From the sequence record OZ195934.1: a DNA stretch of 64,000 bases; one strand, written 5' to 3'. A program made the position numbers and the translations under genes. Position 1 is the first letter of the stretch. Each line of letters begins with the position of its first letter. Under the pieces are notes generated by a model, which saw only the letters and a list, made by a program, of their open reading frames with translations, did no database searches and was not told the origin of the DNA. This document shows, in pieces, positions 19,198 to 34,763 of the stretch.

Positions 19198-20631
19198 TTA
19201 TAAAGCGTATCGGTCGACACCGACAGTCTTCAGCATGATTTTCACTGGCTCAAGCTCACCACCCAACAGCGACGTTAGAATTGAAGGGCTGCAACCCGAC
19301 ACTAACGCTGTGTTCGCTTCACCTGATTTAACAGGCACGTTGTCTAGACGACCACGCAAGTTCCAGAACACTAGTTGCGGCATTTCGTAGCCCGCGTTCG
19401 CATACATGACTTTGATTGCATCGAAGTTCGTAGTGTTACGAGTATGCCAGCCACCGCCAGTACGAGCTTGATCGAATTCCATATCGCTCATGATAAGCAA
19501 TTTGGTTGGCATTTCGTCTTGCGACAAGTTTGCCGTACGAGCGCGTTCAAGAAGAACTTCGAAGCATCGTGTGATGTTCGTGCTCATATCTTCGCCAGAT
19601 CGTTGCATGTTGTCAAGACGCGACTTCAAGCTATCACCCGTCAACTTGTGAAAGTGCGGATCACTTGAGAACGAAATGAATTGATCTTTGAAGATACCCT
19701 CATTACGTTCAGCGACGTAGATGCCAAGAGACATCGCAACTTCTTTACAAGTCACACTACCACCGTGTTCACCGTTGATACCACAGCCCATAGAGCCAGA
19801 AACATCAACAACTGGAATCACGCGCTCGTCAGAGCCTTCCATGTAGTTCGGTAGAGCTTTCCATTGCTCATTTGCAACACGATGGTCACCCATTTTAACG
19901 CTGCGAACAACATCGTACGGGTAAACAGCACCTGCATTGATCTTCGCTTCACCTTTCACAAGCGATGTGATGTACTCACCGTATGCAGATTCAGCGTTAC
20001 GACCGAATGCTTTCTGATAGCGTGCAGACGCTACAGATGGCAGTTTGCCGAACTCGATCTCGTCCCAATTACGAGCACACATCTTCTGTTCAACAGTGTC
20101 AGACAAAAGAGAGATCACTTTACGCCACTGCTTCGCGTTTACACCAACCGACTTGATTGTGCGCTTGAACACGATAGCGTTTTTGCTGCGCTCACGAGGA
20201 AACCACTTAGCAGCAAGCGCGTTTTTGTCATTGACAATCGCGTGTGTCCACAGAGTGATAGCATCAGCTTCAAGAGAAGTACCGAACGCAGATACTAAGT
20301 CATCGAAACGACCAAGTTCTGGGATCTTGCGCATAACTAGACGCGCCACTTCTGGTTGTTCTTTACACAGACGTGCAAAGATTTTGCGGAAAGTACCGCG
20401 CTCACCTGCACCGCCACGCACGTCGCGAGACCATAGCAAGATGCGAGTTGCAAGCTCAGGGTTTTCACCGAATGCGCGATTAAACGCAGTTAGTGACTGA
20501 TCATTACCGCGCATAGCGCCGATAGTGAAGAACAAGTTTAGACACTCGTTACCCGAAGTGCTGTGTGTTACTGCACCGTTTGCTGTACGTGAATCGTTAG
20601 ATTGCATAGCGTTCATAAATAAACTAGTCAT
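19198..20631 (-). CDS. DUF2828 Ro60/TROVE-related protein with C-terminal vWA domain
   Basis: RDVRGGAGER, AAKWFPRE, VYPYDV, VVDVSGSM (MIDAS), SDMEFD, LVFWNL; GGAG SD before ATG 20631. Confidence 0.85.
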   Translation of the reverse strand: MTSLFMNAMQSNDSRTANGAVTHSTSGNECLNLFFTIGAMRGNDQSLTAFNRAFGENPELATRILLWSRDVRGGAGERGTFRKIFARLCKEQPEVARLVMRKIPELGRFDDLVSAFGTSLEADAITLWTHAIVNDKNALAAKWFPRERSKNAIVFKRTIKSVGVNAKQWRKVISLLSDTVEQKMCARNWDEIEFGKLPSVASARYQKAFGRNAESAYGEYITSLVKGEAKINAGAVYPYDVVRSVKMGDHRVANEQWKALPNYMEGSDERVIPVVDVSGSMGCGINGEHGGSVTCKEVAMSLGIYVAERNEGIFKDQFISFSSDPHFHKLTGDSLKSRLDNMQRSGEDMSTNITRCFEVLLERARTANLSQDEMPTKLLIMSDMEFDQARTGGGWHTRNTTNFDAIKVMYANAGYEMPQLVFWNLRGRLDNVPVKSGEANTALVSGCSPSILTSLLGGELEPVKIMLKTVGVDRYAL

Positions 20632-20667
20632 TGCTGTAAGCTCCAAATATCAAGGATCAGAAAAATA

Positions 20668-25094: not shown

Positions 25095-25183
25095 TGGCGG
25101 AGATACTGGGAGTCGAACCCAGAGAACGCTATTAACGTCCGACACCTTAGCAGGGTGCTGTCATACCATTAGACCATATCTCC
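25095..25183 (-). tRNA. tRNA-Ser(GCT)
   Basis: Cloverleaf, long variable arm, CCA. Confidence 0.95.
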
Positions 25184-25314
25184 AGTTCGGAATGCTGCTC
25201 TCATTCTCAACTACATATTTGCTCTTATCGCTGCCGTGTAGTACGAGCTTCGCAGGTTCGCTTTCGATAATTTTAAGAGCAGGGCGACTCATACCAGCTC
25301 TATTCAAGCGAACT
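25184..25314 (-). ncRNA. Putative structured RNA (~130 nt)
   Basis: AGTTCG/CGAACT, GAAT/ATTC and GCTCTTA/TAAGAGC stems in a tRNA spacer. Confidence 0.4.
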
Positions 25315-25320
25315 TGAATT

Positions 25321-25398
25321 TGGTGCCCAACCCGAGATTCGAACTCGGAACTTCTAGCGTTTGAAACTAGCGACTCTGCCAGATTGGCCTAGTTGGGC
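25321..25398 (-). tRNA. tRNA-Leu(CAA)
   Basis: Cloverleaf, loop TTCAAAC, short variable arm, CCA. Confidence 0.9.
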
Positions 25399-25404
25399 AA
25401 TGTT

Positions 25405-25481
25405 TGGTACGCGTGGGCGGATTCGAACCGCCATCCCTGAGATTTTAAGCCTCATGCCTCTGCCAATTGGACCACACGCGC
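25405..25481 (-). tRNA. tRNA-Leu(TAA)
   Basis: Cloverleaf, loop CTTAAAA, CCA. Confidence 0.92.
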
Positions 25482-25483
25482 AT

Positions 25484-25557
25484 TGGAGCTCGTACACAGA
25501 ATCGAACTGTGACCAAGTGATTTGCAATCACTTATACTACCGTTATACGATACGAGC
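25484..25557 (-). tRNA. tRNA-Cys(GCA)
   Basis: Cloverleaf, loop TTGCAAA, U73, CCA. Confidence 0.93.
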
Positions 25558-25567
25558 AAATGTACTT

Positions 25568-25644
25568 TGGGGTGACAGACGGGGACCGAACCCGCATTTT
25601 CCGGAATCACAACCCGGAGGTATTTCCACTTCACCCACTGCCAC
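25568..25644 (-). tRNA. tRNA-His(GTG)
   Basis: Loop TTGTGAT, C73; atypical T-loop TTCGGTC; flanked by TGTACTTTGG/CCAAAGTACA inverted repeat. Confidence 0.85.
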
Positions 25645-25715
25645 ACCAAAGTACACTCTGGGACATATAACGTTTATCAACCGGACTCATTTACGTGGGT
25701 CATTCGAGCAAAGCA

Positions 25716-25961
25716 CTACTTTGCTAGTAAGTTTTCTTTCTTGAGATATATACTATCACTTGAGAGTTCGCGAGTAAACATATTTCTGAAATAAATTTGC
25801 ACATCGTCTTCAGTCGTGTTCGACTCAATTTTCTGCGCTAATTCGAGAATTTTGCTTCGCTTGTATCCCTTTCGCCAACAGTCAAACATCAGTTTGTCCA
25901 TTTCTTTCAGTTTTTCGACCTGATTCGGGTGTACATATTCGCGTGTTTCAAGTAATGACAT
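25716..25961 (-). CDS. Hypothetical protein in tRNA array
   Basis: ORF from MSLLETR; contains a promoter (TTTACT-17-TAGTAT, 25750-25778) for downstream tRNAs. Confidence 0.55.
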   Translation of the reverse strand: MSLLETREYVHPNQVEKLKEMDKLMFDCWRKGYKRSKILELAQKIESNTTEDDVQIYFRNMFTRELSSDSIYLKKENLLAK

Positions 25962-25981
25962 AGTATATTGCTCATAAAGAA

Positions 25982-26056
25982 TGGTAGTCCCTGAGAATTT
26001 CGAAATCTCGACCTTCGCCATGTAAAAGCGGTGCTCTGCCTCTGAGCTAAGGGACT
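25982..26056 (-). tRNA. tRNA-Val(TAC)
   Basis: Cloverleaf, loop TTTACAT, CCA. Confidence 0.9.
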
Positions 26057-26061
26057 ATAAT

Positions 26062-26137
26062 TGGAACGTGTAACGAGATTCGAACTCGTACCTTCGGTTT
26101 GGAAGACCGTAATGCTACCGTTAAACACCATACACGC
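26062..26137 (-). tRNA. tRNA-Gly(TCC)
   Basis: Cloverleaf, loop CTTCCAA, CCA. Confidence 0.93.
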
Positions 26138-26429
26138 ATTGTTAATCAGACGCATTGAACAAGTCTTGAATTGCTTTCAAGTTGCTCAACTCTACTTCAA
26201 GTGTTCTTATAAAGAACGGGTTAGTCTCTACAGAGAGACGATATTCAACATCGCGAATGAATCGACCGATGTTGCCCTTGCTTAGTGTAAAGTAGTCATG
26301 CTTCTTTCTCTTCGTTTGAGGTTAGAATTAGATGAACGTGTTCGTTAACTTCTTGCTCAATCTGCCATTGTTCATAGACATATTCAGCATACAAAAGTGT
26401 TTCGTACATAATTCACCTTTCTTAAAATG

Positions 26430-26506
26430 TGGTAGTGACTCTGAGGTTCGAACTCAGTACCAGCGGCGTATGAAACCACGACTTTACCATCATAAGCTAA
26501 GTCACC
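26430..26506 (-). tRNA. tRNA-Met(CAT)
   Basis: Cloverleaf, loop TTCATAC, CCA. Confidence 0.85.
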
Positions 26507-26614
26507 AAAGCAGATATTAACGTATTTAATCAGCACACGGGCTTGACACCACATTGTTTGTGGTCTACGTGAAGAACCTCTGCACAACAATCCCGCTCTA
26601 ATTGCGTTATGTGG

Positions 26615-26920
26615 TGACTGTCACGAGGAATCTAGTCTTCTTTAAGTGCCTTTCGGCTGTAATAAAGTACAGACAATAACGAAGTGTTTTTTCGTCTTTT
26701 ACATAAATCGCAGTTGACTATCTTGTTACTCTAACAAGCAAGTATCGACTACCTCAGCGTCGCGCCTAGACTGTGTATTTCTACACGCCACATCTTTCGT
26801 TACAAGTCTCGACCTAGCACGTTGTTGCTGTGCTGAACGTCTCGAACCCACGCTAAGACCTAATCATTGTTTTAGTAGATTAGTAGTTTGGTTGCTGCAT
26901 ATTGTCTTACGTGACAGTCA
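26615..26920 (-). ncRNA. Large motif RNA E2 (nested end-pairing)
   Basis: 11-bp IR TGACTGTCACG/CGTGACAGTCA enclosing AGACAATA-TGCAGCAACC...TATTGTCT (26671-26907). Confidence 0.7.
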
Positions 26921-27002
26921 AACACACAATGCCGAAACAATATGCCGAGACGTTCACGCTCTTATTTTTCAAGTTCACACTATCGTAGTGACTCTCGTGA
27001 TA

Positions 27003-27078
27003 TGGCATCCCCAGAAAGATTTGAACTTTCAACCCCGAATTTAGAAGATTCGTGCTCTTCCAATTGAGCTATGAGGAC
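27003..27078 (-). tRNA. tRNA-Arg(TCT)
   Basis: Cloverleaf, loop CTTCTAA, CCA. Confidence 0.93.
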
Positions 27079-27154
27079 ATCAATAAGATTCGAACCATAA
27101 GATCTTGTGACACGATGGTAGTAAAGAGAGTGTCTATCTCATGTGTTCGAAATT

Positions 27155-27230
27155 TGGTGGAGCTTGAGGGTTACGATCCCTCTACTTCTCCGTGCAAGGG
27201 AGATGTTTTACCGATTAGCACTAAAGCCCC
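27155..27230 (-). tRNA. tRNA-Ala(TGC)
   Basis: G3:U70, loop CTTGCAC; atypical T-loop ATCGTAA. Confidence 0.9.
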
Positions 27231-27237
27231 AAATTGT

Positions 27238-27450
27238 CTATTTTAACTCTGTGACGCCTATATTTTTCCAATCAAACAGACCATCGACATCTTCAAGCGA
27301 TTCGCCAGTCACGTCTGCAATATAAGCAGCGACTTTCGATTCGATTTCGTCATTACTTAGAGACTCATCAACAGTGAAAATCTCTTCGTTGTTATTACCA
27401 CCGAATGTGCCGTTAATGTCGTATTCACACCAAACTGATATGTATTTCAT
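27238..27450 (-). CDS. Small acidic hypothetical protein
   Basis: 70-aa ORF with GAGA SD. Confidence 0.6.
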   Translation of the reverse strand: MKYISVWCEYDINGTFGGNNNEEIFTVDESLSNDEIESKVAAYIADVTGESLEDVDGLFDWKNIGVTELK

Positions 27451-27475
27451 AATGTCTCACAAAGTTAATAAAATA

Positions 27476-27550
27476 TGGTGCTCCCGGACAGACTCGAACT
27501 GCCATAACCTGATTACAAAACAGGGATAATCGCCTTTATATTACGGGAGC
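27476..27550 (-). tRNA. tRNA-Thr(TGT)
   Basis: Cloverleaf, loop TTTGTAA, CCA. Confidence 0.9.
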
Positions 27551-27556
27551 GAAACT

Positions 27557-27666
27557 GAGTGTCGTTTATACCGCGTCTCCAAGACCTGAGATACCAACTC
27601 AGCATGGGATTCGAACCCACCGACGTTTCTTGTATCGAAAGAAATTTTAAATTGCTGTAAACACTC
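27557..27666 (-). ncRNA. Circularly permuted tRNA-like RNA E3 (YrlA-like topology)
   Basis: GAGTGT-T-TACAGCAA, anticodon-like hairpin, GTGGG TTCGAAT CCCAT T-arm, loop-closed acceptor, D-like hairpin, AAACG-ACACTC. Confidence 0.8.
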
Positions 27667-27675
27667 TTAGTATTT

Positions 27676-27749
27676 TGGCTGGGGATAACGGACTCGAACC
27701 GATACTGCGAAAGTCAAAGTTTCGTATGCTGCCATTACATCAATCCCCT
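27676..27749 (-). tRNA. tRNA-Gln(TTG)
   Basis: Cloverleaf, loop CTTTGAC, CCA. Confidence 0.92.
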
Positions 27750-27757
27750 ATTGTTCT

Positions 27758-27982
27758 TTAGCGACTCGAATTGATCTCATCGATCATTCGTTTAGCTAGT
27801 TTCGTAGCTAGTGCTTTATCAGCATCGCCAGTTGTTTCTATGTCGTATGCAATTTTACTCACATACTTTGAGTCTAGCGCACCCGCTGATTGTTTAGACC
27901 AGTGATCCTTGACTTTCTGATATTTCGTCATGTCAATCGAATCTTTTGTCGCTTCACCCAAAAATTCTGCTAATGTTTTCAT
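27758..27982 (-). CDS. Candidate internal head protein (T4 IP-like)
   Basis: MKTLAEFLGEA capsid-targeting-like N-terminus; TATAAATA at 28012-28019. Confidence 0.7.
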   Translation of the reverse strand: MKTLAEFLGEATKDSIDMTKYQKVKDHWSKQSAGALDSKYVSKIAYDIETTGDADKALATKLAKRMIDEINSSR

Positions 27983-28022
27983 ATCTCTATTCTTATTAAA
28001 GTGTAAAAACATATTTATATGC

Positions 28023-28171
28023 AAGATAACATACACGACGGCGTAAGTAGTCGTTCTTATGTTTAGACTAGAAATCCACGTCACATCATTAATGCTATAA
28101 TTGCGCCACTCTCTACTATGAATATGTTATGCATTATTCATGCAGACTCTTCTTGCGCTGTAAATTATCTT
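28023..28171 (-). ncRNA. Motif RNA E4
   Basis: AAGATAA-T-TTACAGCGCAA ... ATG-TTATCTT; starts right after tRNA-Asp CCA. Confidence 0.65.
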
Positions 28172-28247
28172 TGGCGGAACTGACGGGGCTCGAACCCGCT
28201 TCCTTCTCCGTGACAGGGAGGTATGCACCCAGTTACACCTCAGCTCC
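28172..28247 (-). tRNA. tRNA-Asp(GTC)
   Basis: Cloverleaf, loop CTGTCAC, G73. Confidence 0.94.
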
Positions 28248-28250
28248 CCA

Positions 28251-28340
28251 AAGATAACTCTTTGTATTAAGACACTGTAATCGTTTGGTTTTTTCTTCAA
28301 ATAAAAAATACTGGTTTGTTTGCAGAATGATTACTATCTT
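28251..28340 (-). ncRNA. Motif RNA E5 (CTGCAAAC subtype)
   Basis: AAGATAG-T-AATCATTCTGCAAAC ... GAG-TTATCTT. Confidence 0.6.
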
Positions 28341-28345
28341 AAATC

Positions 28346-28421
28346 TGGCAGGGACACTCAGATTCGAACTGAGACCAACGGGTTTGGAATCCGTCATGCT
28401 GCCATTAAACACCATGTCCCT
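28346..28421 (-). tRNA. tRNA-Trp(CCA)
   Basis: Cloverleaf, loop TTCCAAA, G73. Confidence 0.9.
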
Positions 28422-28469
28422 ATTGCGTATGAGGTGGCTTAAATCAGTGGCCACTCTCACGCTAAAATT

Positions 28470-28543
28470 TGGTACTCACGAAGAGAATCGAACTCTTATC
28501 TGACGGTTATCAGCCGTCTGCTTTACCGTTAAGCTACGCGAGT
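28470..28543 (-). tRNA. tRNA-Ile(GAT)
   Basis: Cloverleaf, loop CTGATAA. Confidence 0.94.
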
Positions 28544-28608
28544 AAAGTACGCTCGAAAGCGCACAATGTTAATCGGTTAAGTGACTAGCTCGACCAATGT
28601 AACATATT

Positions 28609-28701
28609 TGGAGGAAGATAACGGAGTCGAACCGTCACCGCGCTACTAACGCAATGGGCTGGTTTTCAAGACCAGTTGCGAACCACATCGCCCTATCTTC
28701 C
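28609..28701 (-). tRNA. tRNA-Ser(TGA)
   Basis: Loop CTTGAAA, long variable arm, CCA. Confidence 0.9.
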
Positions 28702-28706
28702 TTTAA

Positions 28707-28955
28707 TTACTTATGTCGTCCCCAATACATCTTATCAAAGCTGTTTAGGTATTCTTCGACTTTAGCTACATCAGCCGCACTAACAACCCATTCGTTGTCT
28801 TGAGTCGTGCGTTTATTCGCAGGAACTGCTTTAGCGCCTAATTTAGCCATTGTGTTTCTGTGTCGTTCGCGATCCATTGATCCACTAAAAAGTGAGCCAG
28901 ATACGCCGTACGTAACGTCCGTTGCTTCTGCAAGAAACTCTTGTAAAGTTTTCAT
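28707..28955 (-). CDS. Candidate internal head protein (T4 IP-like)
   Basis: MKTLQEFLAEA N-terminus; TCTAAATA late-like promoter near 28981. Confidence 0.7.
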   Translation of the reverse strand: MKTLQEFLAEATDVTYGVSGSLFSGSMDRERHRNTMAKLGAKAVPANKRTTQDNEWVVSAADVAKVEEYLNSFDKMYWGRHK

Positions 28956-28999
28956 GTTTTCCACCATTGTCTTAAAACAATATTTAGACGTTTAAAAAT

Positions 29000-29076
29000 T
29001 GGATGCGTGGGAGTGGATTCGAACCACTGACCTCCGGCTTATGAGACCGACGAGCTGACCGCTGCTCTACCCCGCA
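29000..29076 (-). tRNA. tRNA-fMet-like (CAT)
   Basis: TGCGGGGTAGAGCAG initiator-like 5' end, loop CTCATAA; one extra A in acceptor 3' strand. Confidence 0.8.
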
Positions 29077-29080
29077 ATTA

Positions 29081-29266
29081 TTACTTACTGAACTGCACTA
29101 CACAAGTATCTGATTGATACACTATCGTGCCAGTTGCTTCCGCGTCTATTTGAACGATGCAGCCATTTGCCCCATCTTCACCGCGTGATGCTACATCTTT
29201 AATCGAAATGCCACTTGAACAAGCTGTCAATGACAGTGCAAGTGCTAATGCTGCTATTGCTTTCAT
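29081..29266 (-). CDS. Small lipoprotein
   Basis: Signal peptide with lipobox LTAC; two further Cys. Confidence 0.7.
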   Translation of the reverse strand: MKAIAALALALSLTACSSGISIKDVASRGEDGANGCIVQIDAEATGTIVYQSDTCVVQFSK

Positions 29267-29282
29267 GATGTTCACCTTAATT

Positions 29283-29369
29283 TGGTGGTTCGCCTAGGAC
29301 TCGAACCTAGAAGCCCGTTCAAGGGCGAGGGATTTACAATCCCCTGACTTACCATTAGTCTAACGAACC
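29283..29369 (-). tRNA. tRNA-Tyr(GTA)
   Basis: Loop TTGTAAA, long variable arm, CCA. Confidence 0.94.
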
Positions 29370-29375
29370 AGAATT

Positions 29376-29449
29376 TGGTACTCCGTACGGGAGTCGAACC
29401 CGTCCCTTTAGATTGAAAGTCTAACGATCTACCAATAATCTAACGGAGC
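29376..29449 (-). tRNA. tRNA-Glu(TTC)
   Basis: Cloverleaf, loop CTTTCAA. Confidence 0.93.
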
Positions 29450-29572
29450 ATTGAAAAATTATTTATTAGCAAACTAGCAAGTTATCTGAGATAATCATTT
29501 AACGGGCCCAGCTAGTAAACTAATAGATAATTTCTCATCTAGAGATAGTTTAGTGACTTCTCAACGGTCAAT
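29450..29572 (-). ncRNA. Putative rod-like RNA (~120 nt)
   Basis: AAATTAT/ATAATTT, ATTAG/CTAAT, ACTAGC/GCTAGT stems separated by 2x2 internal loops. Confidence 0.45.
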
Positions 29573-29573
29573 T

Positions 29574-29648
29574 TGGTGCGTCGCCTGAGATTCGAACTCA
29601 GACTTTTCTGGTTAAAAGCCAGATGTACTACCATTATACGAACGACGC
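29574..29648 (-). tRNA. tRNA-Lys(TTT)
   Basis: Cloverleaf, loop CTTTTAA. Confidence 0.94.
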
Positions 29649-29654
29649 ATTAAC

Positions 29655-29729
29655 TGGTGCACCCTCTCGGAATCGAACCGAGCACTGTGGGACTTCACTC
29701 CACCGCTTTTCCTGATAAGCTAAGGGTAC
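29655..29729 (-). tRNA. tRNA-Phe(GAA)
   Basis: Cloverleaf, atypical loop GTGAAGT. Confidence 0.85.
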
Positions 29730-29735
29730 TTTATT

Positions 29736-29810
29736 TGGCGGACGTGGAGAATTTCGAAATCTCGACCCCGGTGTTAACAGCACCGCGCTCTGCCTCTGAG
29801 CTACACATCC
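29736..29810 (-). tRNA. tRNA-Asn(GTT)
   Basis: Cloverleaf, loop CTGTTAA, G73. Confidence 0.94.
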
Positions 29811-29815
29811 AAATT

Positions 29816-29892
29816 TGGTACGCAGAGAGAGATTCGAACTCTCAACTCCTAGTTTCTAAGACTAGCGGCTCTGCCAATTGGCCTACCTGCGC
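29816..29892 (-). tRNA. tRNA-Leu(TAG)
   Basis: Cloverleaf, loop CTTAGAA. Confidence 0.92.
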
Positions 29893-29905
29893 ACTGTGTA
29901 AATAA

Positions 29906-29980
29906 TGGTCGGAGTAGAAGAATTCGAATCTTCACCGCTCGGCCCCAAACCGACTATGCTGCCATTAACACCATACTCCG
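29906..29980 (-). tRNA. tRNA-Pro(TGG)
   Basis: Cloverleaf, loop TTTGGGG. Confidence 0.92.
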
Positions 29981-30008
29981 AAAAACTTTTGTAGAACTTC
30001 GTTCTTAC

Positions 30009-30202
30009 ATTGTACATGATGTTTTCTTCGTTGTAAACATCTTTTTTGAAAAACTTTTCGTTCGTTTTCGAACGTTTAAATGCTTTTCTCTATTGTACAT
30101 GATGTTTTCGTCATTGTAAACATCTTTTTTAAATCTTTTTGAATGACTTAACGTTTTTGTTTTAACACGTTAATCATATCACTCGTTTACGACTCGTTAA
30201 AC
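30009..30202 (-). promoter_or_regulatory. Three tandem early promoters driving the tRNA array
   Basis: TTTACA-17-TACAAT twice (30009-30037, 30092-30120, near-duplicate) and TTTAAC-17-TATGAT (30173-30201). Confidence 0.8.
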
Positions 30203-30278
30203 ACTTATTTGTGAATAATTTCGTTAAATTCTATCATCGCGACAGTAGATAACGAGACACGGTCCTAAACGTATCGTT

Positions 30279-30354
30279 TGGCACTCGATATAAGATTCGA
30301 ACTTATAACCTGCGCCTTCGTAGGACGCTGCTCTTCCAATTGAGCTAATCGAGC
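30279..30354 (-). tRNA. tRNA-Arg(ACG)
   Basis: Cloverleaf, loop CTACGAA. Confidence 0.93.
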
Positions 30355-30381
30355 ATTAAAGCTTGTTTGCTTTCTTTGTTT

Positions 30382-30410
30382 ATCATACTCTGCTTTGAAA
30401 GCATGTTAAA
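30382..30410 (-). promoter_or_regulatory. Early promoter
   Basis: TTTAAC-17-TATGAT. Confidence 0.7.
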
Positions 30411-30437
30411 CAAAGAATTTCAGTTTATTTCGCCCAT

Positions 30438-30462
30438 AAAAAAGGACGCTAATCTGCGTCCT
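30438..30462 (-). terminator. Rho-independent terminator
   Basis: AGGACGC-AGATTA-GCGTCCT-T tract. Confidence 0.8.
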
Positions 30463-30723
30463 CAAGTATACTTCTATGTTATACTTTCGGACTACATTCG
30501 TGGATCCCATTTCTGGTTGCCAAACGTCGGATTCGCCAGATATACCGATACTGAGCTAAAGCGCATTTCGCTTCGTAAAATCTCAATATGTGTATTAGAA
30601 TGTGGCATCGTGGCTCTCTTTTCGAACGTAAAAATTGTTGTTTTGTTTTTTCTATAATTGTACTTATAAGACTAAAATCGAGGTTTCGTGCGTTTTTTGC
30701 AAAAAACCTCGAAAAAAGTGAAA

Positions 30724-30963
30724 TTATTTTTTAAAGTGCTTTCTTTTATTGCACTCAGCTAAGATTTCATTGTCATAATGATTCTGAAGCTGCTTGAATT
30801 TCTTGTGCTGATCTGGCGTTAGCTCATTCTCATCACGAAGATTTTTCAAGAACCCAAGAGGTTTACGAAACGACTTGCGATACGAGTCTAAACGCTGATC
30901 AGTCAAACCGACTAGTTGTTTAGGCGTTAGCAATGTCTTATTAATGTCAAAGTTCTTACTCAT
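30724..30963 (-). CDS. Hypothetical basic protein
   Basis: 79-aa ORF with AAGGGG SD. Confidence 0.65.
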   Translation of the reverse strand: MSKNFDINKTLLTPKQLVGLTDQRLDSYRKSFRKPLGFLKNLRDENELTPDQHKKFKQLQNHYDNEILAECNKRKHFKK

Positions 30964-30985
30964 GTGTTACCCCTTGTATTGAAAT

Positions 30986-31100
30986 TGGCTGACCGATGCG
31001 GGACTCGAACCCACGACCACGTGCTTAACAGGCAATTAGAAATGCGGTAGCGATACTTATCAATATCATTTACGTGCTCTACCACTGAGCTAATCGGTCA
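30986..31100 (-). ncRNA. tRNA-Asn(GTT)-like RNA with 38-nt insertion after nt 28
   Basis: Removing 31035-31072 restores CGTGC-CTGTTAA-GCACG arm; 8-bp acceptor, G73, CCA. Confidence 0.8.
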
Positions 31101-31105
31101 ATTGT

Positions 31106-31349
31106 TTAGTTCGCTTTTGCAGTGCACCGAGCCACCTCAGAATTGATACATTTCGTTTGACGCGCATTCGGATGGTTACGCTTTGCGTCGTGAGTCTGTC
31201 AGCGATGCATGGCATACACACACCCCGTTTCTCACCTACTCTGCCCTACAGACGTTATCTGCTTGGTTAACAATTGCACTCGCATTAGGTATAACATGTC
31301 ACCGTCATCTTCCGGACGATTTCAGTGTATGCACTCAAAAGCGAACTAA
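31106..31349 (-). ncRNA. Putative 244-nt RNA closed by a 20-bp terminal stem
   Basis: TTAGTTCGCTTTTGAGTGCA pairs with TGCACTGCAAAAGCGAACTAA. Confidence 0.65.
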
Positions 31350-31362
31350 TGTTGATTCTATT

Positions 31363-31911
31363 CTACTTCTCTCGCAATGTAAACAGCAGATTGCGATAAT
31401 CGAAGTTTCGTTTGTTCTTTGTATTGTAGAAGCTAGTCCAGTCGATTGCAACGGGACAATTCTTACTACCGACACGAGCAATGAATATCTCGTGTGTCGC
31501 GCTGTGCTTCGCGTTATAAGCTCTTACTCGTTTTTCATAGTGAGCTATGTATTCTGCACAAGCAGCGTTGTAATCAGCTCTAGAGAACGTCTTACCTTTC
31601 ATAAAGCGTGCATCAAGATACGGACGAATAACCCGAACGCGTTCTCCCGACCATGCCATATTAAAGCTGTTTTCAATTTCACCTAGAATTTGACCAGTCT
31701 TTAAGTTACGGCTCAGTATGACCCAACAGCGTGTACGACGATAGTCTTCAAAACGCATCACCTTAATGTGTGCATTAATGAATTCATCGCGTTTAGCGTT
31801 GCACTCAATGCGTGCTGCACGACGCTGTTCTTCAGTCATCGACTCTCGAACTTCTTTCGGATACAATGTAGCAAAGCGTTTCGGGCAATCTGCCATCGTT
31901 AGCTTTTTCAT
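31363..31911 (-). CDS. Hypothetical basic protein
   Basis: 182-aa ORF coupled to upstream gene. Confidence 0.65.
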   Translation of the reverse strand: MKKLTMADCPKRFATLYPKEVRESMTEEQRRAARIECNAKRDEFINAHIKVMRFEDYRRTRCWVILSRNLKTGQILGEIENSFNMAWSGERVRVIRPYLDARFMKGKTFSRADYNAACAEYIAHYEKRVRAYNAKHSATHEIFIARVGSKNCPVAIDWTSFYNTKNKRNFDYRNLLFTLREK

Positions 31912-32117
31912 ATCATACCTCTCTTGCGTTTAAGTTGCGAACGCTCAATTTGATTGAAGACTTGCTTATCTTTTGCTTTATTGCGTCGAGAATTACCCCA
32001 ACGACTTCCAGCACATACACCAAAGCGGTCTTTTTTAAGCTTCTTAGCTAACCACAATGGTACTTCGACACGAGCACGTAAGTAGTGCTTTGCGATGTCT
32101 TTATAAGTCTTGCCCAT
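31908..32117 (-). CDS. Small basic protein
   Basis: ORF from MGKTYKD with AGAGGA SD. Confidence 0.6.
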   Translation of the reverse strand: MGKTYKDIAKHYLRARVEVPLWLAKKLKKDRFGVCAGSRWGNSRRNKAKDKQVFNQIERSQLKRKRGMI

Positions 32118-32130
32118 GATAATTTCCTCT

Positions 32131-32371
32131 TGTTGCCGCTCCGTGGAATCGAACCACGTCAAACACAACACCTCGTCAGCCCAATAAGAGTTTCGAAGTA
32201 AGAGCTTACTAGCACATTAAAGCACGGGGCATTATTTCTCTCAAGCAGTTTTCGACCACCGCGTGAGCTTTCTTATCCCCAGTCCCAGTGATTCAGAACG
32301 AAACATGATAGCGAGTCATGAGTTGAACTAATGTTGGGAAAACACTGCGTATTGTACACCGAGTAAGCGGC
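32131..32371 (-). ncRNA. tmRNA-shaped 241-nt tRNA-like RNA
   Basis: GCCGCTT/GAGCGGC acceptor, CGTGG TTCGATT CCACG T-arm, ACAATAC/GTGTTGT helix. Confidence 0.7.
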
Positions 32372-32385
32372 ATTGTTAATAAACT

Positions 32386-32505
32386 TGGTGCCCTACGTGA
32401 ACGTTGAACGTTTTTCTACTTAGCTTCCATCTACCTCACTCAACGAAGAGCTATAGATTCCGTCAAGGTCTACTTCCACTTGACTAAGCGATTCAAACGT
32501 AGGAC
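32386..32505 (-). ncRNA. 120-nt CCA-terminated non-cloverleaf RNA
   Basis: GTCCTACG/CGTAGGGC-ACCA end; internal CTTAG/CTAAG, TCAAG/CTTGA, TCTAT/GTAGA stems. Confidence 0.7.
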
Positions 32506-32544
32506 ATATTTTGAAAGTAGTCTCGTAAAACTACTTTGAGAATA

Positions 32545-32622
32545 TGGTGACCCTCGTGGGACTCGAACCCAACTATCTTTCGGTTATGAGCCGACTGCTT
32601 TTACCAGTTAAGCTAAAGGGCC
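32545..32622 (-). tRNA. tRNA-Met or Ile2 (CAT)
   Basis: GGCCCTT acceptor (ileX-like), loop CTCATAA, CCA. Confidence 0.85.
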
Positions 32623-32623
32623 A

Positions 32624-32989
32624 TTATGTTTCTAGCCATCTACCAATCTTTGCAGCGAAGATGTTTTCTTCTTCGTTGATTAGCGCAGTCGATTTCATTT
32701 GATGAAACATATCTTGCTTGTGAAGCGTATCAAGTTTGACTGCACATTGCAACAACTCTTTTACGCTTCGCATAATTTCTTCTGAATCAAGCTGCGACGT
32801 TTCAGGATGATAAATCAAATTCTGAAGCACAGCTTCTATGTTGCCGTAACAACCCATACCAATAAAATTGATGATAAGTCGATACTGCATTTCTACTGAG
32901 AATGAACAATGCTTGCGCAAATTGCGCTTAACGACTTCACATACTAGCAACTTCTCTTCGAGTTCTTGCTTTATTGCTGTAAACTTCAT
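32624..32989 (-). CDS. Hypothetical protein
   Basis: 121-aa ORF with GAGGTG SD. Confidence 0.65.
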   Translation of the reverse strand: MKFTAIKQELEEKLLVCEVVKRNLRKHCSFSVEMQYRLIINFIGMGCYGNIEAVLQNLIYHPETSQLDSEEIMRSVKELLQCAVKLDTLHKQDMFHQMKSTALINEEENIFAAKIGRWLET

Positions 32990-33005
32990 TGTTCACCTCT
33001 TAAAA

Positions 33006-33128
33006 TGGTGGAGAGTGCGGGATTCGAACCACGCGGCCAAAAGATTTACTTAGTTAGTGTTTGCAGCATGAATACTTGACAATATTCTGTCAACGTTCTT
33101 TTGCTCTACCAGACTGAGCTAACTCTCC
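33006..33128 (-). ncRNA. tRNA-Tyr(GTA)-like RNA with ~45-nt insertion in anticodon loop
   Basis: Canonical acceptor, D and T arms; AAAGA/TCTTT stem enclosing 52 nt that end AAGTAAA. Confidence 0.8.
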
Positions 33129-33140
33129 ATTTAAAACACA

Positions 33141-33264
33141 TTGAGCAGGGTGCAGGATTCGAACCTGCGTCACGATCTTAGAATGATATGCTGTTTGGGT
33201 TGCTGAATACAAGCTATACAACTTGCGTTTATGCTACGTGTGCTAGCCACTACACCAACCCTGC
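33141..33264 (-). ncRNA. tRNA-Arg(TCT)-like RNA with 49-nt insertion after nt 28
   Basis: Removing 33188-33236 gives CGATC-ATTCTAA-GATCG; ends CAA; 17-bp flanking IR. Confidence 0.8.
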
Positions 33265-33517
33265 TCAATGTGTTCTAGTGCAATGCCATATGAACTCACA
33301 TGGCATCACTGAACCTGTTTTATATTGCCTTAGCTAACCAACACAATCTGAAATCGTGCGCTTTAATAAAGGGAGGGCGTCCCTCTTCGCCAGTTAGCAT
33401 AGATGTGTTGCTATGCACCCATTTGTCAATCATGTCCAAGGCAAACAGAACAATGAATACGAGTGCGAGAAGATATACAATCAAATTGAAACACCTCGCT
33501 AAAAAGTTAGAGCATAT

Positions 33518-33639
33518 TGGTCGTGCGTACTAGAATCGAACTAGTCCTACGATCTCCTAATGATATGCGTTATTGGTTGCTGAATACTTACTTGTCAGTA
33601 AGCGTTATGCTACGTGTGCTGCCACTACACCAACGCACG
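33518..33639 (-). ncRNA. tRNA-Leu(TAG)-like RNA with 48-nt insertion after nt 28
   Basis: Removing 33565-33612 gives CGATC-ATTAGGA-GATCG; ACCA end; 21-bp perfect flanking IR. Confidence 0.8.
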
Positions 33640-33654
33640 ACCAATATGCTCTAG

Positions 33655-33809
33655 ATTATTTAATTTGCGTGCTACTTGCACGACGACTGAGCGAATTATA
33701 ACTCAGCTAGTTTTTGTTCGAGAACTCGGCGGCTAAGCCTATTCACTGCTTGTCAGAACTTAGAACTGACCTCATGTTTTCATTGCGTCTAACACGCAAA
33801 TTAAATAAT
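33655..33809 (-). ncRNA. Putative 155-nt RNA closed by a 17-bp perfect stem
   Basis: ATTATTTAATTTGCGTG/CACGCAAATTAAATAAT; internal GTCAG/CTGAC and CTGAG/CTCAG hairpins. Confidence 0.65.
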
Positions 33810-33921
33810 TCTTATCTTCAGTAAAGAGCAGAAACGATAAGACTAGTCTGTTTAATCAATCGTGTTCATCTTCAAGAAGAGGCGAAAACGATGAACTTAG
33901 TTCGCTTAATCAACTGTGTTA

Positions 33922-34046
33922 ATCTTAGCAGCTTTTTCGCTGAAGTCAAACACTTTTTTCAAATTTCTTTCATCGAATCAAGAGTTTGTGTTGCTGTCTC
34001 TCGACTCGATGAAATACATTCTACAGGAAAACAAAGCGAAGTCAAC
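33922..34046 (-). promoter_or_regulatory. Two tandem early promoters heading the ncRNA array
   Basis: TTTGAC-17-TAAGAT (33922-33950) and GTTGAC-17-TAGAAT (34018-34046). Confidence 0.75.
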
Positions 34047-34063: not shown

Positions 34064-34315
34064 TTACGATTGAATGATAATACCGCTTTCCGTCTCACCG
34101 CGCTCAAGAGCTGCGTGCTTAATCTGTAGTTGTGCTACTGCTTGTTGAAGTTCTGTGATCGTCTGATCATATAGCTTCATGTTGCTTTGCATGTGTTTAA
34201 TCTGATCGCTCTGCAAACCAACGATATAGGTAAGCAAGATGATGCTTTCATTATCTTGCAGTTCTTCACCGTCGTTGTATTTCTTCAGAACAGATTGGAT
34301 TGTAATATCAGCCAT
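34064..34315 (-). CDS. Coiled-coil hypothetical protein
   Basis: ORF from MADITIQ. Confidence 0.6.
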   Translation of the reverse strand: MADITIQSVLKKYNDGEELQDNESIILLTYIVGLQSDQIKHMQSNMKLYDQTITELQQAVAQLQIKHAALERGETESGIIIQS

Positions 34316-34763
34316 TGTTTTCAGCCCATGACAAATCGAGTGGTTCAACGTATTCGTCTACAAGTCGAACTTCGGCTTCGACGAACAAGGGAGTGATTGC
34401 ATCGTCATACGAAAGCGTGACGTGCGGAGTATAGTCAGGGTAATCGTGAGTACCACCGATAGAGATAAGGTCTTCATGACGCGCTACAAGCTCAGGACAT
34501 TTCATCTTCGCAACAACTGCGTGATTACCGTCTTGAGTTTTCCAGCAATCGATATACTCAATAGTTGCTACGAATGTCGTATCAACGGCAGGCACATCAA
34601 TTTGATTGCGACTGTATAGAACAGTGACGTGAAATTTATCTGGATCTAAAGGATTTGCTAGACGAAGCGATGTCTGCAAGCGAACTAACTCTTGTTTACT
34701 CGATTCGTCTAGTTTGATACCAACGTACGTCCCCTGACTTTCAAGGAACGTAGATAGTTTCAT
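34308..34763 (-). CDS. acb1: 2H phosphoesterase, T4 57B / anti-CBASS Acb1 family
   Basis: Two HxT motifs (FHVTVLYSR, PHVTLSY); synteny 57B-57A-1-3. Confidence 0.85.
   Translation of the reverse strand: MKLSTFLESQGTYVGIKLDESSKQELVRLQTSLRLANPLDPDKFHVTVLYSRNQIDVPAVDTTFVATIEYIDCWKTQDGNHAVVAKMKCPELVARHEDLISIGGTHDYPDYTPHVTLSYDDAITPLFVEAEVRLVDEYVEPLDLSWAENNG

What the first reader, a model, noticed from the sequence alone, without database searches (positions are those of the whole stretch)
33141..33264. tRNA-Arg(TCT)-like gene with 49-nt motif insertion at the same 28/29 position
The insert TAGCATAAACG-CAAGTT-GTAT-AGCTTG-T-ATTCAGCAACC-CAAACAGCAT follows CG of the anticodon stem, as in the Asn-like and Leu-like genes. 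Removing it gives CGATC-ATTCTAA-GATCG. The gene ends in CAA rather than CCA and sits in a 17-bp perfect inverted repeat (33135-33151 / 33258-33274). An intact tRNA-Arg(TCT) exists at 27003.
Basis: seen in the sequence. Interest (0 to 1): 0.75.

Follow-up and report, generated by a model that had tools for sequence, protein, structure and literature searches.

The report
tRNA-shaped Y-RNA-like phage gene
This is not a broken or split arginine tRNA gene but a conserved tRNA-shaped small RNA of a KVP40-like Vibrio phage; its 49-base "insert" is a module also found beside Ro60-like protein genes in many unrelated phages, so it is most likely the phage's version of a Y RNA.

Summary
On the minus strand, 33141-33264 is a tRNA cloverleaf with 49 extra bases (33188-33236) between anticodon-stem pairs 28 and 29. 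It ends in UCAA and sits in a 17-bp perfect inverted repeat, which is 20 bp with wobble pairs.

The interpretation needs changing. Fourteen orthologues in KVP40-like vibriophages keep the insert and the long closing helix with heavy covariation: 98.7% of cells paired, 31 of 41 pairs changed on both sides. The "anticodon" loop drifts in sequence and length (7-9 nt), so it is neither an Arg decoder nor a pseudogene.

The insert has three parts:
- an A-rich ..AAAC stretch
- a 7-bp hairpin
- the motif UCAGCAA

Circularly permuted, the same module forms the terminal stem of small RNAs encoded beside Ro60-like (DUF2828) genes in FelixO1, Listeria A511, Campylobacter CPX, mycobacteriophage LeBron and 79 metagenomic loci. 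In those 79 loci there are 42 stem-adjacent motifs on the gene strand against 2 on the other, and 36 of the 42 lie within 1 kb of the gene. The window encodes such a protein (19198-20646), whose model matches Ro60 structures.

Best reading: a permuted YrlA-type Y RNA embedded in a tRNA scaffold. Binding and function are inferred, not shown.

The parts
33132..33277 (-). Whole RNA gene as conserved ('class A'): tRNA-shaped core plus a 13-bp extension of the acceptor helix, followed by a U-run
   Evidence: CM R1 scores it at 156 bits over all 146 positions. MFE is -52.7 kcal/mol, z = -4.76. Covariation.
33258..33277 (-). 5' strand of the 20-bp closing helix (the acceptor-equivalent 7 nt are 33258-33264)
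   Evidence: 16 of 21 helix columns change on both sides across 19 sequences, 99.5% paired. G-U pairs fit only this strand's RNA.
33132..33151 (-). 3' strand of the closing helix (acceptor-equivalent 33145-33151; then U-CAA paired with the leader; UUUU at the end)
33240..33255 (-). D-arm GUGU-AGUGGCUA-GCAC
   Evidence: Invariant or compensated. Nearly identical to the D-arm of the FelixO1 Y-like RNA.
33188..33236 (-). The 49-nt 'insert' between C27-G28 (33237-33238) and position 29; candidate docking module for the Ro60-like protein
33227..33236 (-). A-rich linker UAGCAUAAAC that precedes the module hairpin
   Evidence: The same ..AAAC element precedes the 3' stem strand of RNAs beside Ro-like genes in other phages.
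33209..33226 (-). Module hairpin GCAAGUU-GUAU-AGCUUGU (7 bp; orthologues have GNNA-type loops)
   Evidence: All 6 tested pairs change on both sides, 99.1% paired.
33193..33208 (-). Single-stranded motif AUUCAGCAACCCAAAC (core UCAGCAA at 33200-33206)
   Evidence: C.GCAA is invariant in 19 sequences. It matches the ACAGCAA signature beside Ro-like genes.
33175..33187 (-). Small hairpin AUC-AUUCUAA-GAU, the 'anticodon-like' loop; closed below by C-G pairs 33237-33238 with 33173-33174
   Evidence: The stem is kept (2 of 3 pairs compensated in the D479 paralogues). The loop varies from 7 to 9 nt among orthologues.
33152..33168 (-). T-arm GCAGG-UUCGAAU-CCUGC
   Evidence: 4 of 5 pairs compensated.
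33508..33653 (-). Paralogue 'class B': same D-arm and module (GCUUACU-GACA-AGUAAGU, AUUCAGCAACCAAUAAC), 21-bp closing helix, loop AUUAGGA
   Evidence: R1 scores 146 bits.
33009..33128 (-).
   Evidence: Rfam tRNA 49.8 bits with a 52-nt insertion. R1 42.5 bits..
30990..31099 (-). 'Class E' (Asn-like; homologue of KVP40 Pseudo-3): module at 28/29, conserved CUGUUAA loop, encoded CCA
   Evidence: (58 bits).
19198..20646 (-). Gene for the Ro60-like protein (DUF2828 + DUF7788; annotated start is probably the ATG at 20631), the proposed protein partner
   Evidence: Pfam; PHROG 850 'RNA-binding protein'. AF2 model pLDDT 80, pTM 0.81. Foldseek top six hits are all Ro60, probability 1.0, TM 0.54-0.63 over the full length.
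27556..27668 (-). Unpermuted relative in the same genome: terminal stem GAGUGU/ACACUC, UUACAGCAAUUUAAAA, hairpin, T-arm, closed acceptor-like hairpin, small D-like hairpin, ..AUAAAC (YrlA topology)
   Evidence: The KVP40 orthologue has a compensatory change in the closed hairpin.

Best explanation
The locus encodes a stable non-coding RNA of about 120-146 nt, made from the minus strand. It folds like a tRNA (acceptor, D and T arms), but its anticodon arm opens into a three-way junction that carries a protein-docking module.

The module reads: A-rich ..AAAC, a 7-bp hairpin, then single-stranded UCAGCAAC.

The same module is seen in small RNAs encoded beside Ro60-like (DUF2828) genes in many phages. 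There it forms the terminal stem: the 5' strand is followed by ACAGCAA and the 3' strand is preceded by ..AAAC. Some of those RNAs also carry a T-arm, a closed acceptor-like hairpin and a D-arm, which is the YrlA topology. Cutting such an RNA at the closed acceptor loop and closing its terminal stem with a tetraloop gives exactly the order of parts seen here. The gene is therefore a circularly permuted Y-RNA-like tRNA mimic.

Proposed working:
- The phage's Ro60-like protein (19198-20646) binds the module.
- The tRNA-shaped body gives stability and processing, and presents a tRNA-like surface to tRNA-handling proteins of the host or phage.
- The resulting particle acts in RNA surveillance or counter-defence during infection.

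Shown: the gene's conservation, its structure, and the module's identity and association with Ro-like genes. Inferred: binding, the mature ends and the biological role.
For: 1. It is a real, selected RNA.
- 51 Vibrio phage records hold it.
- In the alignment of 19 A/B-type sequences, 98.7% of cells are paired and 31 of 41 pairs change on both sides. No shuffle out of 500 reaches this, and structures slid by 1-3 columns pair only 30-48%. RNAalifold finds the same helices.
- G-U pairs fit only the minus-strand transcript.

2. The insert is the conserved part. C.GCAA is invariant, all hairpin pairs covary, and the pseudo-anticodon loop varies.

3. The window encodes a Ro60-fold protein on the same strand at the edge of the tRNA island. 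Homologues at 30-34% identity in actinophages are annotated 'Ro-like RNA binding protein'.

4. That gene abuts tRNA clusters in FelixO1, A511 and CPX. The gaps beside it hold stem-ACAGCAA RNAs: three in A511, two in CPX, three in LeBron, four in FelixO1.

5. Statistics.
- Seven annotated loci (118.6 kb): ACAGCAA occurs 23 times on the gene strand and once on the other. 15 are stem-adjacent, against a shuffled mean of 1.2 and maximum of 6.
- 79 IMG/VR loci (660 kb): 120 against 26; stem-adjacent 42 against 2; shuffled mean 7.5, maximum 13. 29 of the 42 lie within 500 nt of the gene and 36 within 1 kb.

6. LeBron 6520-6639 (Rfam YrlA 39.8 bits, E 2e-5), FelixO1 about 12570-12710, metagenomic L038 881-1012 and window 27556-27668 join this module to T-arm, closed hairpin and D-arm. 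The table shows that classes A-E are colinear with them under permutation.

7. Aeromonas phage AsFcp_1, which has the Ro-like gene, also has tRNA-embedded modules.

8. Published precedent.
- Y RNAs mimic tRNA and lie near Ro60 genes, also in phages (PMC4201824).
- A phage Ro60 binds phage Y-like RNAs and host PNPase (PMC12135203).
- Bas63 gp130, Ro60-like and directly upstream of tRNA genes, counters the Ppl defence. Its authors guessed that some of the 'tRNA genes' are Y RNAs (10.1101/2024.10.10.617714).
Against: - No binding or expression data exist.
- The finding lies 12.5 kb from the Ro-like gene. Published Y RNAs lie within about 4 kb.
- Its motif is UCAGCAA (ACGGCAA in KVP40), not the exact ACAGCAA, and classes C-E are more degenerate.
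- The canonical Ro-binding motif GNCGAAN0-1G is absent. Rfam YrlA does not reach its gathering score anywhere, and its 28-bit hit here spans two adjacent genes, which is an artefact.
- The Ro60 relation of the protein rests on fold alone. A sequence profile against PDB gives only E 0.73 for the phage TROVE protein.
- Only 32 of 79 metagenomic loci show the strict motif.
- The 20-bp closing helix and the anticodon-like hairpin have no assigned role.
Confidence: 0.6

Rival explanations
1. It is a tRNA-scaffolded non-coding RNA whose module serves something other than the Ro-like protein. Examples: a decoy or sponge for host anticodon nucleases or tRNA-modifying enzymes, or a docking site for another phage factor. 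On this view the link to Ro-like genes is indirect, because both simply live in tRNA islands.
For: - Conservation and structure are as for the best explanation.
- The anticodon-like loops keep U33 and a purine at 37 in many members, and differ between orthologues as in an arms race.
- Class E keeps an exact tRNA-Asn loop CUGUUAA across Vibrio and Aeromonas phages.
- The gene is 12.5 kb from the Ro-like gene.
- Phage tRNAs are known to neutralise tRNA-targeting defences (PMC11464382, listed).
Against: - The motif tracks the Ro-like gene itself, not tRNAs in general. 36 of 42 stem-adjacent motifs lie within 1 kb of it, on its strand.
- It occurs beside the gene in LeBron, where no tRNA is annotated in the 11.4 kb examined around the gene.
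- The T4 tRNA region has no ACAGCAA at all.
Confidence: 0.25
2. It is an intron-containing tRNA-Arg(UCU) gene. The 49 nt are cut out by a protein endonuclease, the halves are joined by a phage RNA ligase, and a working tRNA results.
For: - Removing the 49 nt restores a perfect cloverleaf with a 7-nt loop, U33 and A37.
- The junction is at the same stem position in several genes.
- T4-like phages are generally known to carry RNA repair enzymes (background knowledge, not checked here).
Against: - Orthologues have 8- and 9-nt loops and different triplets.
- There is no CCA, unlike 25 of the 26 tRNAs here.
- The covarying 13-bp leader-trailer helix would hinder RNase P.
- The 'intron' is the most conserved part.
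- No intron or ribozyme family matches.
- An intact tRNA-Arg(tct) already exists.
- The neighbouring 57B is Acb1.
- The same module occurs in RNAs with no tRNA exons at all.
Confidence: 0.04
3. It is a decaying tRNA pseudogene that picked up a junk or mobile insertion, as the 'tRNA-Pseudo' and 'tRNA-OTHER' labels in KVP40 and 6E35.1a imply for its sister genes.
For: - Database annotation.
- tRNA finders reject it.
- There is no CCA.
Against: - Purifying selection with compensatory changes runs through every helix.
- The insert is kept over phages whose flanking DNA is only about 75% identical.
- There are several paralogues per genome.
Confidence: 0.02
4. The signal is at the DNA level. The inverted repeat and hairpin would be a recombination or homing site, or a promoter/terminator cassette, rather than a functional RNA.
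For: - A long perfect inverted repeat is followed by a T-run.
- Homing endonuclease genes sit in phage tRNA clusters. TCU-VP03 has one where this gene lies in its relatives.
- TTGAYA-like hexamers occur in some hairpins (inspection).
Against: - G-U wobble pairs occur at many helix positions and would be A-C mismatches on the other strand or in a cruciform.
- The D- and T-arm tertiary nucleotides are kept.
- The motif shows strand bias of 120 to 26, and 42 to 2 when stem-adjacent.
Confidence: 0.04

Closest known systems
YrlA-type bacterial and phage Y RNAs (Rfam RF02553), partners of Ro60/Rsr
   Same: - A tRNA mimic with T- and D-arms.
- A separate protein-docking stem with a short conserved single-stranded motif just after one strand.
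- Encoded on the same strand as a Ro60-fold protein gene, with several copies per genome.
- Unpermuted relatives with YrlA topology exist in this same window (27556-27668), in FelixO1 and in LeBron.
   Different: - Circularly permuted: the RNA ends are at the acceptor stem and the docking stem is closed by a tetraloop.
- The motif is WCRGCAA plus ..AAAC instead of GNCGAAN0-1G.
- The protein is DUF2828/DUF7788, which Pfam does not recognise as TROVE.
- The gene is 12.5 kb from the protein gene.
- The RNA scores below the Rfam threshold.
KVP40 'tRNA-Pseudo-3/-4/-5' and 'tRNA-OTHER' annotations in Schizotequatrovirus genomes
   Same: These are the sister genes (classes E, D and C) of this locus, with the same module in the anticodon arm.
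   Different: The finding's own orthologue (KVP40 181318-181451) and class B are not annotated at all. The label 'pseudogene' is contradicted by the covariation.
T4 RNAC and RNAD (species 1 and 2 RNAs)
   Same: Small stable RNAs of unknown role in the tRNA cluster of a T4-type phage. The gene order 1-57A-57B-tRNA region is shared. RNAC has a T-arm and paired ends.
   Different: No sequence similarity was seen. There is no ACAGCAA motif anywhere in the 6.5-kb T4 region.
tRNA genes with introns (group I in bacteria and phages; bulge-helix-bulge introns at non-canonical positions in archaea)
   Same: Extra sequence inside the anticodon arm of an otherwise perfect cloverleaf.
   Different: - 49 nt with no ribozyme core.
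- The host domain has no splicing endonuclease.
- The 'exons' do not keep a decoding identity.
- The insert is itself the conserved element.
tmRNA, including its circularly permuted two-piece forms, and engineered tRNA scaffolds for RNA display
   Same: tRNA-like ends are used as a stable chassis for another functional RNA module. There is precedent for circular permutation of a tRNA-like RNA gene (general knowledge).
   Different: There is no tag reading frame and no alanine identity. The cargo here is a protein-docking hairpin.

Membership tests
Functional tRNA-Arg(UCU) gene | Recognised as a tRNA by standard detectors as it stands | tested here: not met
   ARAGORN and Rfam tRNA at gathering and at E<=10 give no call. 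A call appears only after deleting 49 nt, or with introns allowed, and then as 'Pyl(cta)'.
Functional tRNA-Arg(UCU) gene | 7-nt anticodon loop with UCU kept in orthologues | tested here: not met
   Loops of 7, 8 or 9 nt with different triplets in 14 orthologues.
Functional tRNA-Arg(UCU) gene | 3' CCA encoded, as in this phage's other tRNAs | tested here: not met
   UCAA here. 25 of the 26 tRNAs end in CCA.
Intron-containing tRNA (group I) | Group I ribozyme core within the insert | tested here: not met
   49 nt; no Rfam intron or ribozyme match at E<=10 in 30400-34000.
Intron-containing tRNA (protein-spliced) | Spliced, ligated product and a cognate endonuclease | not testable with these tools
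   Needs RNA data. The adjacent 57B is Acb1, not a splicing ligase.
tRNA pseudogene | Neutral decay: helices not maintained, insert not conserved | tested here: not met
   98.7% paired, 31 of 41 pairs compensated, 0 of 500 shuffles reach this.
YrlA / bacterial Y RNA (RF02553) | Reaches the Rfam gathering score (69 bits) | tested here: not met
   No hit on the gene itself. The 28.2-bit hit at 33070-33196 bridges two genes. The LeBron relative scores 39.8 bits.
YrlA / bacterial Y RNA (RF02553) | tRNA-like domain with T-arm and D-arm | tested here: met
YrlA / bacterial Y RNA (RF02553) | GNCGAAN0-1G motif near the 5' end | tested here: not met
   Absent. A different motif, WCRGCAA, occupies the analogous place.
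YrlA / bacterial Y RNA (RF02553) | RNA ends at the protein-binding stem, with the acceptor-like stem closed by a loop | tested here: not met
   The order is permuted. The unpermuted form is present at 27556-27668.
YrlA / bacterial Y RNA (RF02553) | Encoded on the same strand as, and within about 4 kb of, a Ro60 orthologue | tested here: inconclusive
   Same strand. A Ro60-fold protein is present, but it is 12.5 kb away and its similarity is at fold level only.
YrlA / bacterial Y RNA (RF02553) | Bound by the Ro60 protein | not testable with these tools
   Needs immunoprecipitation or gel-shift.
Stem-ACAGCAA RNAs beside phage DUF2828 Ro-like genes (family defined here) | 6-9 bp stem; one strand followed within 0-3 nt by WCRGCAA; partner strand preceded by A-rich ..AAAC; on the strand of the Ro-like gene | tested here: met
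   GCAAGUU/AGCUUGU, then AU + UCAGCAA, preceded by CAUAAAC.

The most novel reading that the evidence does not exclude
Phage Ro60-like (DUF2828) proteins are present in at least 710 of 50,697 phage records, including FelixO1, A511, LeBron and KVP40. They would have a dedicated and so far undescribed class of partner RNAs, marked by a stem followed by ACAGCAA.

In T4-like Vibrio and Aeromonas phages this module has been grafted, by circular permutation, into the anticodon arms of several different tRNA scaffolds. These include an exact tRNA-Asn mimic and forms that end in CCA. The result would be a set of tRNA look-alike particles that carry the Ro-like protein to tRNA-handling machinery or to tRNA-directed host defences.
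Probability: 0.45. Interest if true: 0.85.

Novelty: new variant of a known kind. Interest (0 to 1): 0.7.

Why it matters
- It turns a set of genes labelled 'pseudo-tRNA' in the KVP40 record, or left unannotated, into candidate functional RNAs.
- It supplies a concrete, searchable RNA signature for a Ro60-like protein family that is common in tRNA-rich phages. For one member (Bas63 gp130) a counter-defence phenotype has been reported, but no RNA partner has been identified.
- It shows a natural case of a tRNA used as a chassis for a protein-docking module, and of circular permutation between two forms of one RNA family within a single genome.
- It makes a direct test possible of what phage Ro-Y particles do during infection.
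- It warns annotators that 110-150-nt 'tRNAs with introns' in phage tRNA islands may be Y-like RNAs.

Tried and rejected
- **Splicing by the neighbouring '57B RNA ligase'.** Pfam shows it is Acb1.
- **Known small ribozymes or introns in the insert.** No Rfam hit. The CUGAUAAG-type loops in orthologue hairpins lack the hammerhead core, and the loops are better read as a U-A pair plus a GNNA tetraloop (inspection).
- **A pseudoknot between the hairpin loop and GCAUAUCA.** The loop varies while the partner is invariant, so there is no support.
- **RNAalifold's alternative pairing CAU/GUG instead of C27-G28 with C-G.** The D479 paralogue X2 has a compensatory CC/GG at the tRNA-like pairing and breaks the alternative.
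- **A sigma-70 promoter inside the hairpins.** The spacing fits only the Asn-like gene (inspection).
- **Homology with T4 RNAC or RNAD.** None seen.
- **A DNA pattern scan of IMG/VR for more class A/B members.** Only KVP40 and VH7D were true hits; the rest scored as ordinary tRNAs or not at all with R1.
- **The Rfam YrlA hit at 33070-33196.** It is an artefact of a T-arm followed by the next gene's D-arm, the known dimeric-tRNA false positive.
- **A sequence-profile link of the protein to TROVE.** Not significant.
- **A loose motif-plus-6-bp-stem scan.** It was swamped by chance hits and was replaced by the strict scan.
- **The KVP40 genome paper (PMC180978).** Not in the library.
Full report
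**Source and setting.** The window is 100% identical to Vibrio phage 6E35.1a and its relatives D482, K575 and others. These are KVP40-like T4-type phages of about 253 kb. On the minus strand the order is:
- dNMP kinase
- 57A
- 57B (34308-34763), which Pfam identifies as the Acb1 anti-CBASS enzyme
- small ORFs
- a tRNA island with 26 ordinary tRNAs at 25095-32622
- about 4.5 kb further on, a 482-aa 'RNA-binding protein' gene at 19198-20646

**The observation.**
- The minus strand of 33141-33264 reads as a cloverleaf with 49 extra bases after C27-G28.
- The extra bases are window 33188-33236. Removing them in silico gives a 73-nt tRNA-Arg(tct) by ARAGORN.
- As it stands, neither ARAGORN nor the Rfam tRNA model calls it.
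- The 17-bp perfect inverted repeat is real. It extends to 20 bp (33132-33151 with 33258-33277), so the acceptor helix continues 13 bp into leader and trailer and is followed by UUUU.
- The RNA ends UCAA where 25 of the 26 tRNAs of this phage end in CCA.

**It is a selected RNA, not a wreck.**
- blastn finds the gene in 51 Vibrio phage records. In KVP40 it lies at 181318-181451 and is unannotated.
- An alignment of 14 orthologues and one of 19 sequences that adds a paralogous class and two D479 genes were scored against the tRNA-like structure plus the insert hairpin.
- 98.7% of cells pair and 31 of 41 pairs change on both sides. None of 500 shuffles reaches this, and structures slid by 1-3 columns pair only 30-48%.
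- 16 of the 21 closing-helix pairs, all 6 insert-hairpin pairs and 4 of 5 T-stem pairs covary.
- Many G-U pairs fit only the minus-strand transcript.
- RNAalifold recovers the same helices independently.

**It is not an arginine tRNA.**
- The 3-bp hairpin after the insert keeps its stem, but its loop differs among orthologues: AUUCUAA here, AUUCAUAA in KVP40, VS1, F86 and nt-1, AUUUCCAA in VH7D, AUUUCAA in V05, CUUCAAA in 1.081.O, and 9 nt in D479.
- With the insert removed, the core resembles the phage's tRNA-Trp and tRNA-Gly (0.71, 0.70 identity) more than its tRNA-Arg(tct) (0.58).
- The insert holds the invariant bases C.GCAA.

**A family in the same genome.**
- ARAGORN with introns allowed, a T-arm/acceptor scan and a covariance model (R1) show the following in the window: class A (the finding, 156 bits), class B (33508-33653, 146 bits, 21-bp closing helix), class E (30990-31099, Asn-like, 58 bits) and class D (33009-33128, 42 bits).
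- KVP40 annotates the sister genes as tRNA-Pseudo-3, -4 and -5.
- D479 has at least six such genes.
- All share one module: an A-rich stretch ending ..AAAC, a 6-7-bp hairpin usually capped U[GNNA]A, then single-stranded (A/U)C(A/G)GCAA(C/U)(C/U)AA. The motif is more degenerate in classes C-E.
- The module sits at 28/29 in classes A, B and E. In classes C and D it follows a full 5-bp stem.

**The protein lead.**
- The 482-aa protein has Pfam DUF2828 + DUF7788 and PHROG 850 'RNA-binding protein'.
- An AlphaFold2 model built from 32 homologues has pLDDT 80 and pTM 0.81.
- Its six best PDB matches are all Ro60: Thermus phage phiLo 9l5y, and Xenopus and human 2i91, 1yvp, 1yvr and 9nf8. Probability is 1.0, TM 0.54-0.63, and the alignment covers the full length. 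The next hits are bare vWA domains.
- Sequence profiles do not reach Ro60 (E 0.73), so the relation is at fold level.
- tblastn finds the family in 710 phage records. Actinophage members are annotated 'Ro-like RNA binding protein'.

**The module belongs with that protein.**
- The Ro-like gene abuts the tRNA cluster in FelixO1, Listeria A511 and Campylobacter CPX. In LeBron it is followed by a 360-nt gap.
- Those gaps contain tandem small RNAs. Each has a 7-9-bp terminal stem whose 5' strand is followed by (U/A)ACAGCAA(U/A)(U/A)A and whose 3' strand is preceded by an A-rich ..AAAC. There are three in A511, two in CPX, three in LeBron and four in FelixO1.
- Four RNAs add a T-arm, a closed acceptor-like hairpin and a D-arm between the two stem strands, which is the YrlA topology:
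  - LeBron 6520-6639 (Rfam YrlA 39.8 bits, E 2e-5)
  - FelixO1 about 12570-12710
  - metagenomic L038 881-1012
  - window 27556-27668 (conserved in KVP40 with a compensatory change)
- Read around the circle, such an RNA runs: acceptor 5' strand, D-arm, A-rich AAAC, stem strand, [ends], stem strand, ACAGCAA, small hairpin, T-arm, acceptor 3' strand. Class A has exactly this order, with a tetraloop where the ends were and ends where the closed loop was.

**Statistics.**
- In seven annotated loci (118.6 kb), exact ACAGCAA occurs 23 times on the gene strand and once on the other. 15 are stem-adjacent, against 1.2 (maximum 6) in shuffles. 11 of the 23 gene-strand motifs, 10 of them stem-adjacent, lie within 700 nt of the gene.
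- In 79 further IMG/VR loci (660 kb) fetched by the protein, the counts are 120 against 26, and 42 against 2 stem-adjacent (shuffles 7.5, maximum 13). 29 of the 42 lie within 500 nt and 36 within 1 kb of the gene. 32 loci have at least one.
- The T4 tRNA region has none.
- Aeromonas phage AsFcp_1, which has the gene, also has two tRNA-embedded modules.
- No Rfam family matched the stem-ACAGCAA RNAs themselves at the E-value limits used; the only Rfam hit on a module-bearing RNA was the sub-threshold YrlA match to the LeBron RNA.

**What is known.**
- Y RNAs partner Ro60. The bacterial and phage YrlA forms mimic tRNA, carry a short motif after the 5' stem strand and lie near the Ro60 gene. Permutation differences between Y RNA lineages have been noted (PMC4201824).
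- A Thermus phage Ro60 binds two phage Y-like RNAs and host PNPase (PMC12135203).
- In the FelixO1-like phage Bas63, a Ro60-like gp130 directly upstream of tRNA genes counters the Ppl defence. The authors guessed that some of the 'tRNA genes' are Y RNAs.
- I found no paper describing the ACAGCAA module or the KVP40-type embedded forms.
- T4 RNAC and RNAD are analogous tRNA-cluster RNAs of unknown role, but they show no similarity.

**Mechanism.**
- Shown: the gene, its fold, the module and the module's association with Ro-like genes.
- Inferred: the Ro-like protein docks on the hairpin and CAGCAA element. The tRNA body gives nuclease resistance and access to tRNA enzymes. The particle works in RNA surveillance or counter-defence.
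- Unexplained: the 20-bp closing helix (a Y-RNA-like terminal stem, a processing signal or a terminator), the variable anticodon-like loop, and why classes D and E keep CCA and, for class E, an exact tRNA-Asn loop.

**Probabilities.**
- Confidence in the Y-like, Ro-partner reading is 0.6.
- A tRNA-scaffolded RNA with another partner is 0.25.
- Splicing to tRNA-Arg, a pseudogene and a DNA-level element together are about 0.1.

**Verdict.** This is a new variant of a known kind: a permuted, tRNA-embedded Y-like RNA with a new motif, tied to a fold-level Ro60 relative. Interest is 0.7.

Noticed in passing
window 33508-33653 (-): A second gene of the same kind (class B). It has a 21-bp closing helix, the module GCUUACU-GACA-AGUAAGU + AUUCAGCAACCAAUAAC, the loop AUUAGGA, and an encoded ACCA that is paired inside the helix. 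It is conserved in all the KVP40-like loci examined.
   Followed up: yes
window 27556-27668 (-), between tRNA-Gln and tRNA-Thr: An unannotated RNA of about 113 nt in YrlA topology: GAGUGU stem, UUACAGCAAUUUAAAA, hairpin, T-arm, closed hairpin CUGAG/CUCAG, small D-like hairpin, ..AUAAAC, ACACUC. The KVP40 orthologue has CAGAG/CUCUG, which is compensatory. Rfam YrlA does not hit it at E<=1.
   Followed up: partly
window 33968-34014 (-): A 17-bp hairpin with the loop ACAGCAACACAAA lies just downstream of a strong sigma-70-like promoter (34045-34018, TTGACT-16-TAGAAT). A second promoter-like site at 33949-33922 lies upstream of class B.
   Followed up: no
window 26880-26960 (-) and 25065-25075 (-): Two further motif instances lie in gaps of the tRNA island. 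One is the hairpin GCAUAUUGU...ACAAUAUGC followed by AGCAACCAAAC. The other is UACAGCAACCAAC just after tRNA-Ser(gct).
   Followed up: no
window 20625-20650 (-); KVP40 L037 about 1700-1760 (-): The start of the Ro-like gene overlaps the motif (GGAG CUU ACAGCA-AUG). In KVP40 the 5' UTR has the stem GACAUU/AAUGUC enclosing UUACAGCAAUUUAA, the Shine-Dalgarno sequence and AUAAAC next to the AUG. This may be autoregulation by the protein. No clear stem is seen in the window version.
   Followed up: partly
window 18624-19148 (-): An RNaseH-like (PF04308) gene lies directly downstream of the Ro-like gene. The same pair is found in the metagenomic T4-like locus L038 (11747-12289) and in KVP40 (gene 0299).
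   Followed up: no
window 34308-34763 (-): The gene annotated '57B / RNA ligase' in relatives matches Pfam Acb1 (anti-CBASS cyclic-nucleotide phosphodiesterase) at E 9.5e-45.
   Followed up: yes
window 30990-31099 (-); L045 11790-11916: Class E keeps an exact tRNA-Asn anticodon loop CUGUUAA, with compensated stem pairs, across Vibrio and Aeromonas phages, although a normal tRNA-Asn is also present. In the Aeromonas copy it is combined with a long closing helix.
   Followed up: partly
L041 (FelixO1) 11882, 12049, 12503, 12590: Four stem-ACAGCAA RNAs are interleaved with the first tRNAs just downstream of the Ro-like gene. The last one (about 12570-12710) has a T-arm, a closed hairpin and a D-arm. 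None is annotated.
   Followed up: partly
L042 (Listeria phage A511) 3510-4061: A ROOL-like large RNA (Rfam RF03087, 87.5 bits, E 2.7e-16, just under the gathering score of 99.1) lies between the tRNA cluster and the Ro-like gene.
   Followed up: no
L014 (Vibrio phage TCU-VP03-AIR1) 2966-3619: A homing endonuclease gene sits downstream of class B, where relatives carry classes A, C and D. This phage has class B but not class A.
   Followed up: no
L038 1017-1090: A CCA-ended tRNA-like element in a metagenomic T4-like phage has an 8-nt anticodon-type loop (CUUUCAAU). It lies next to a Y-like RNA and is not called by ARAGORN.
   Followed up: no
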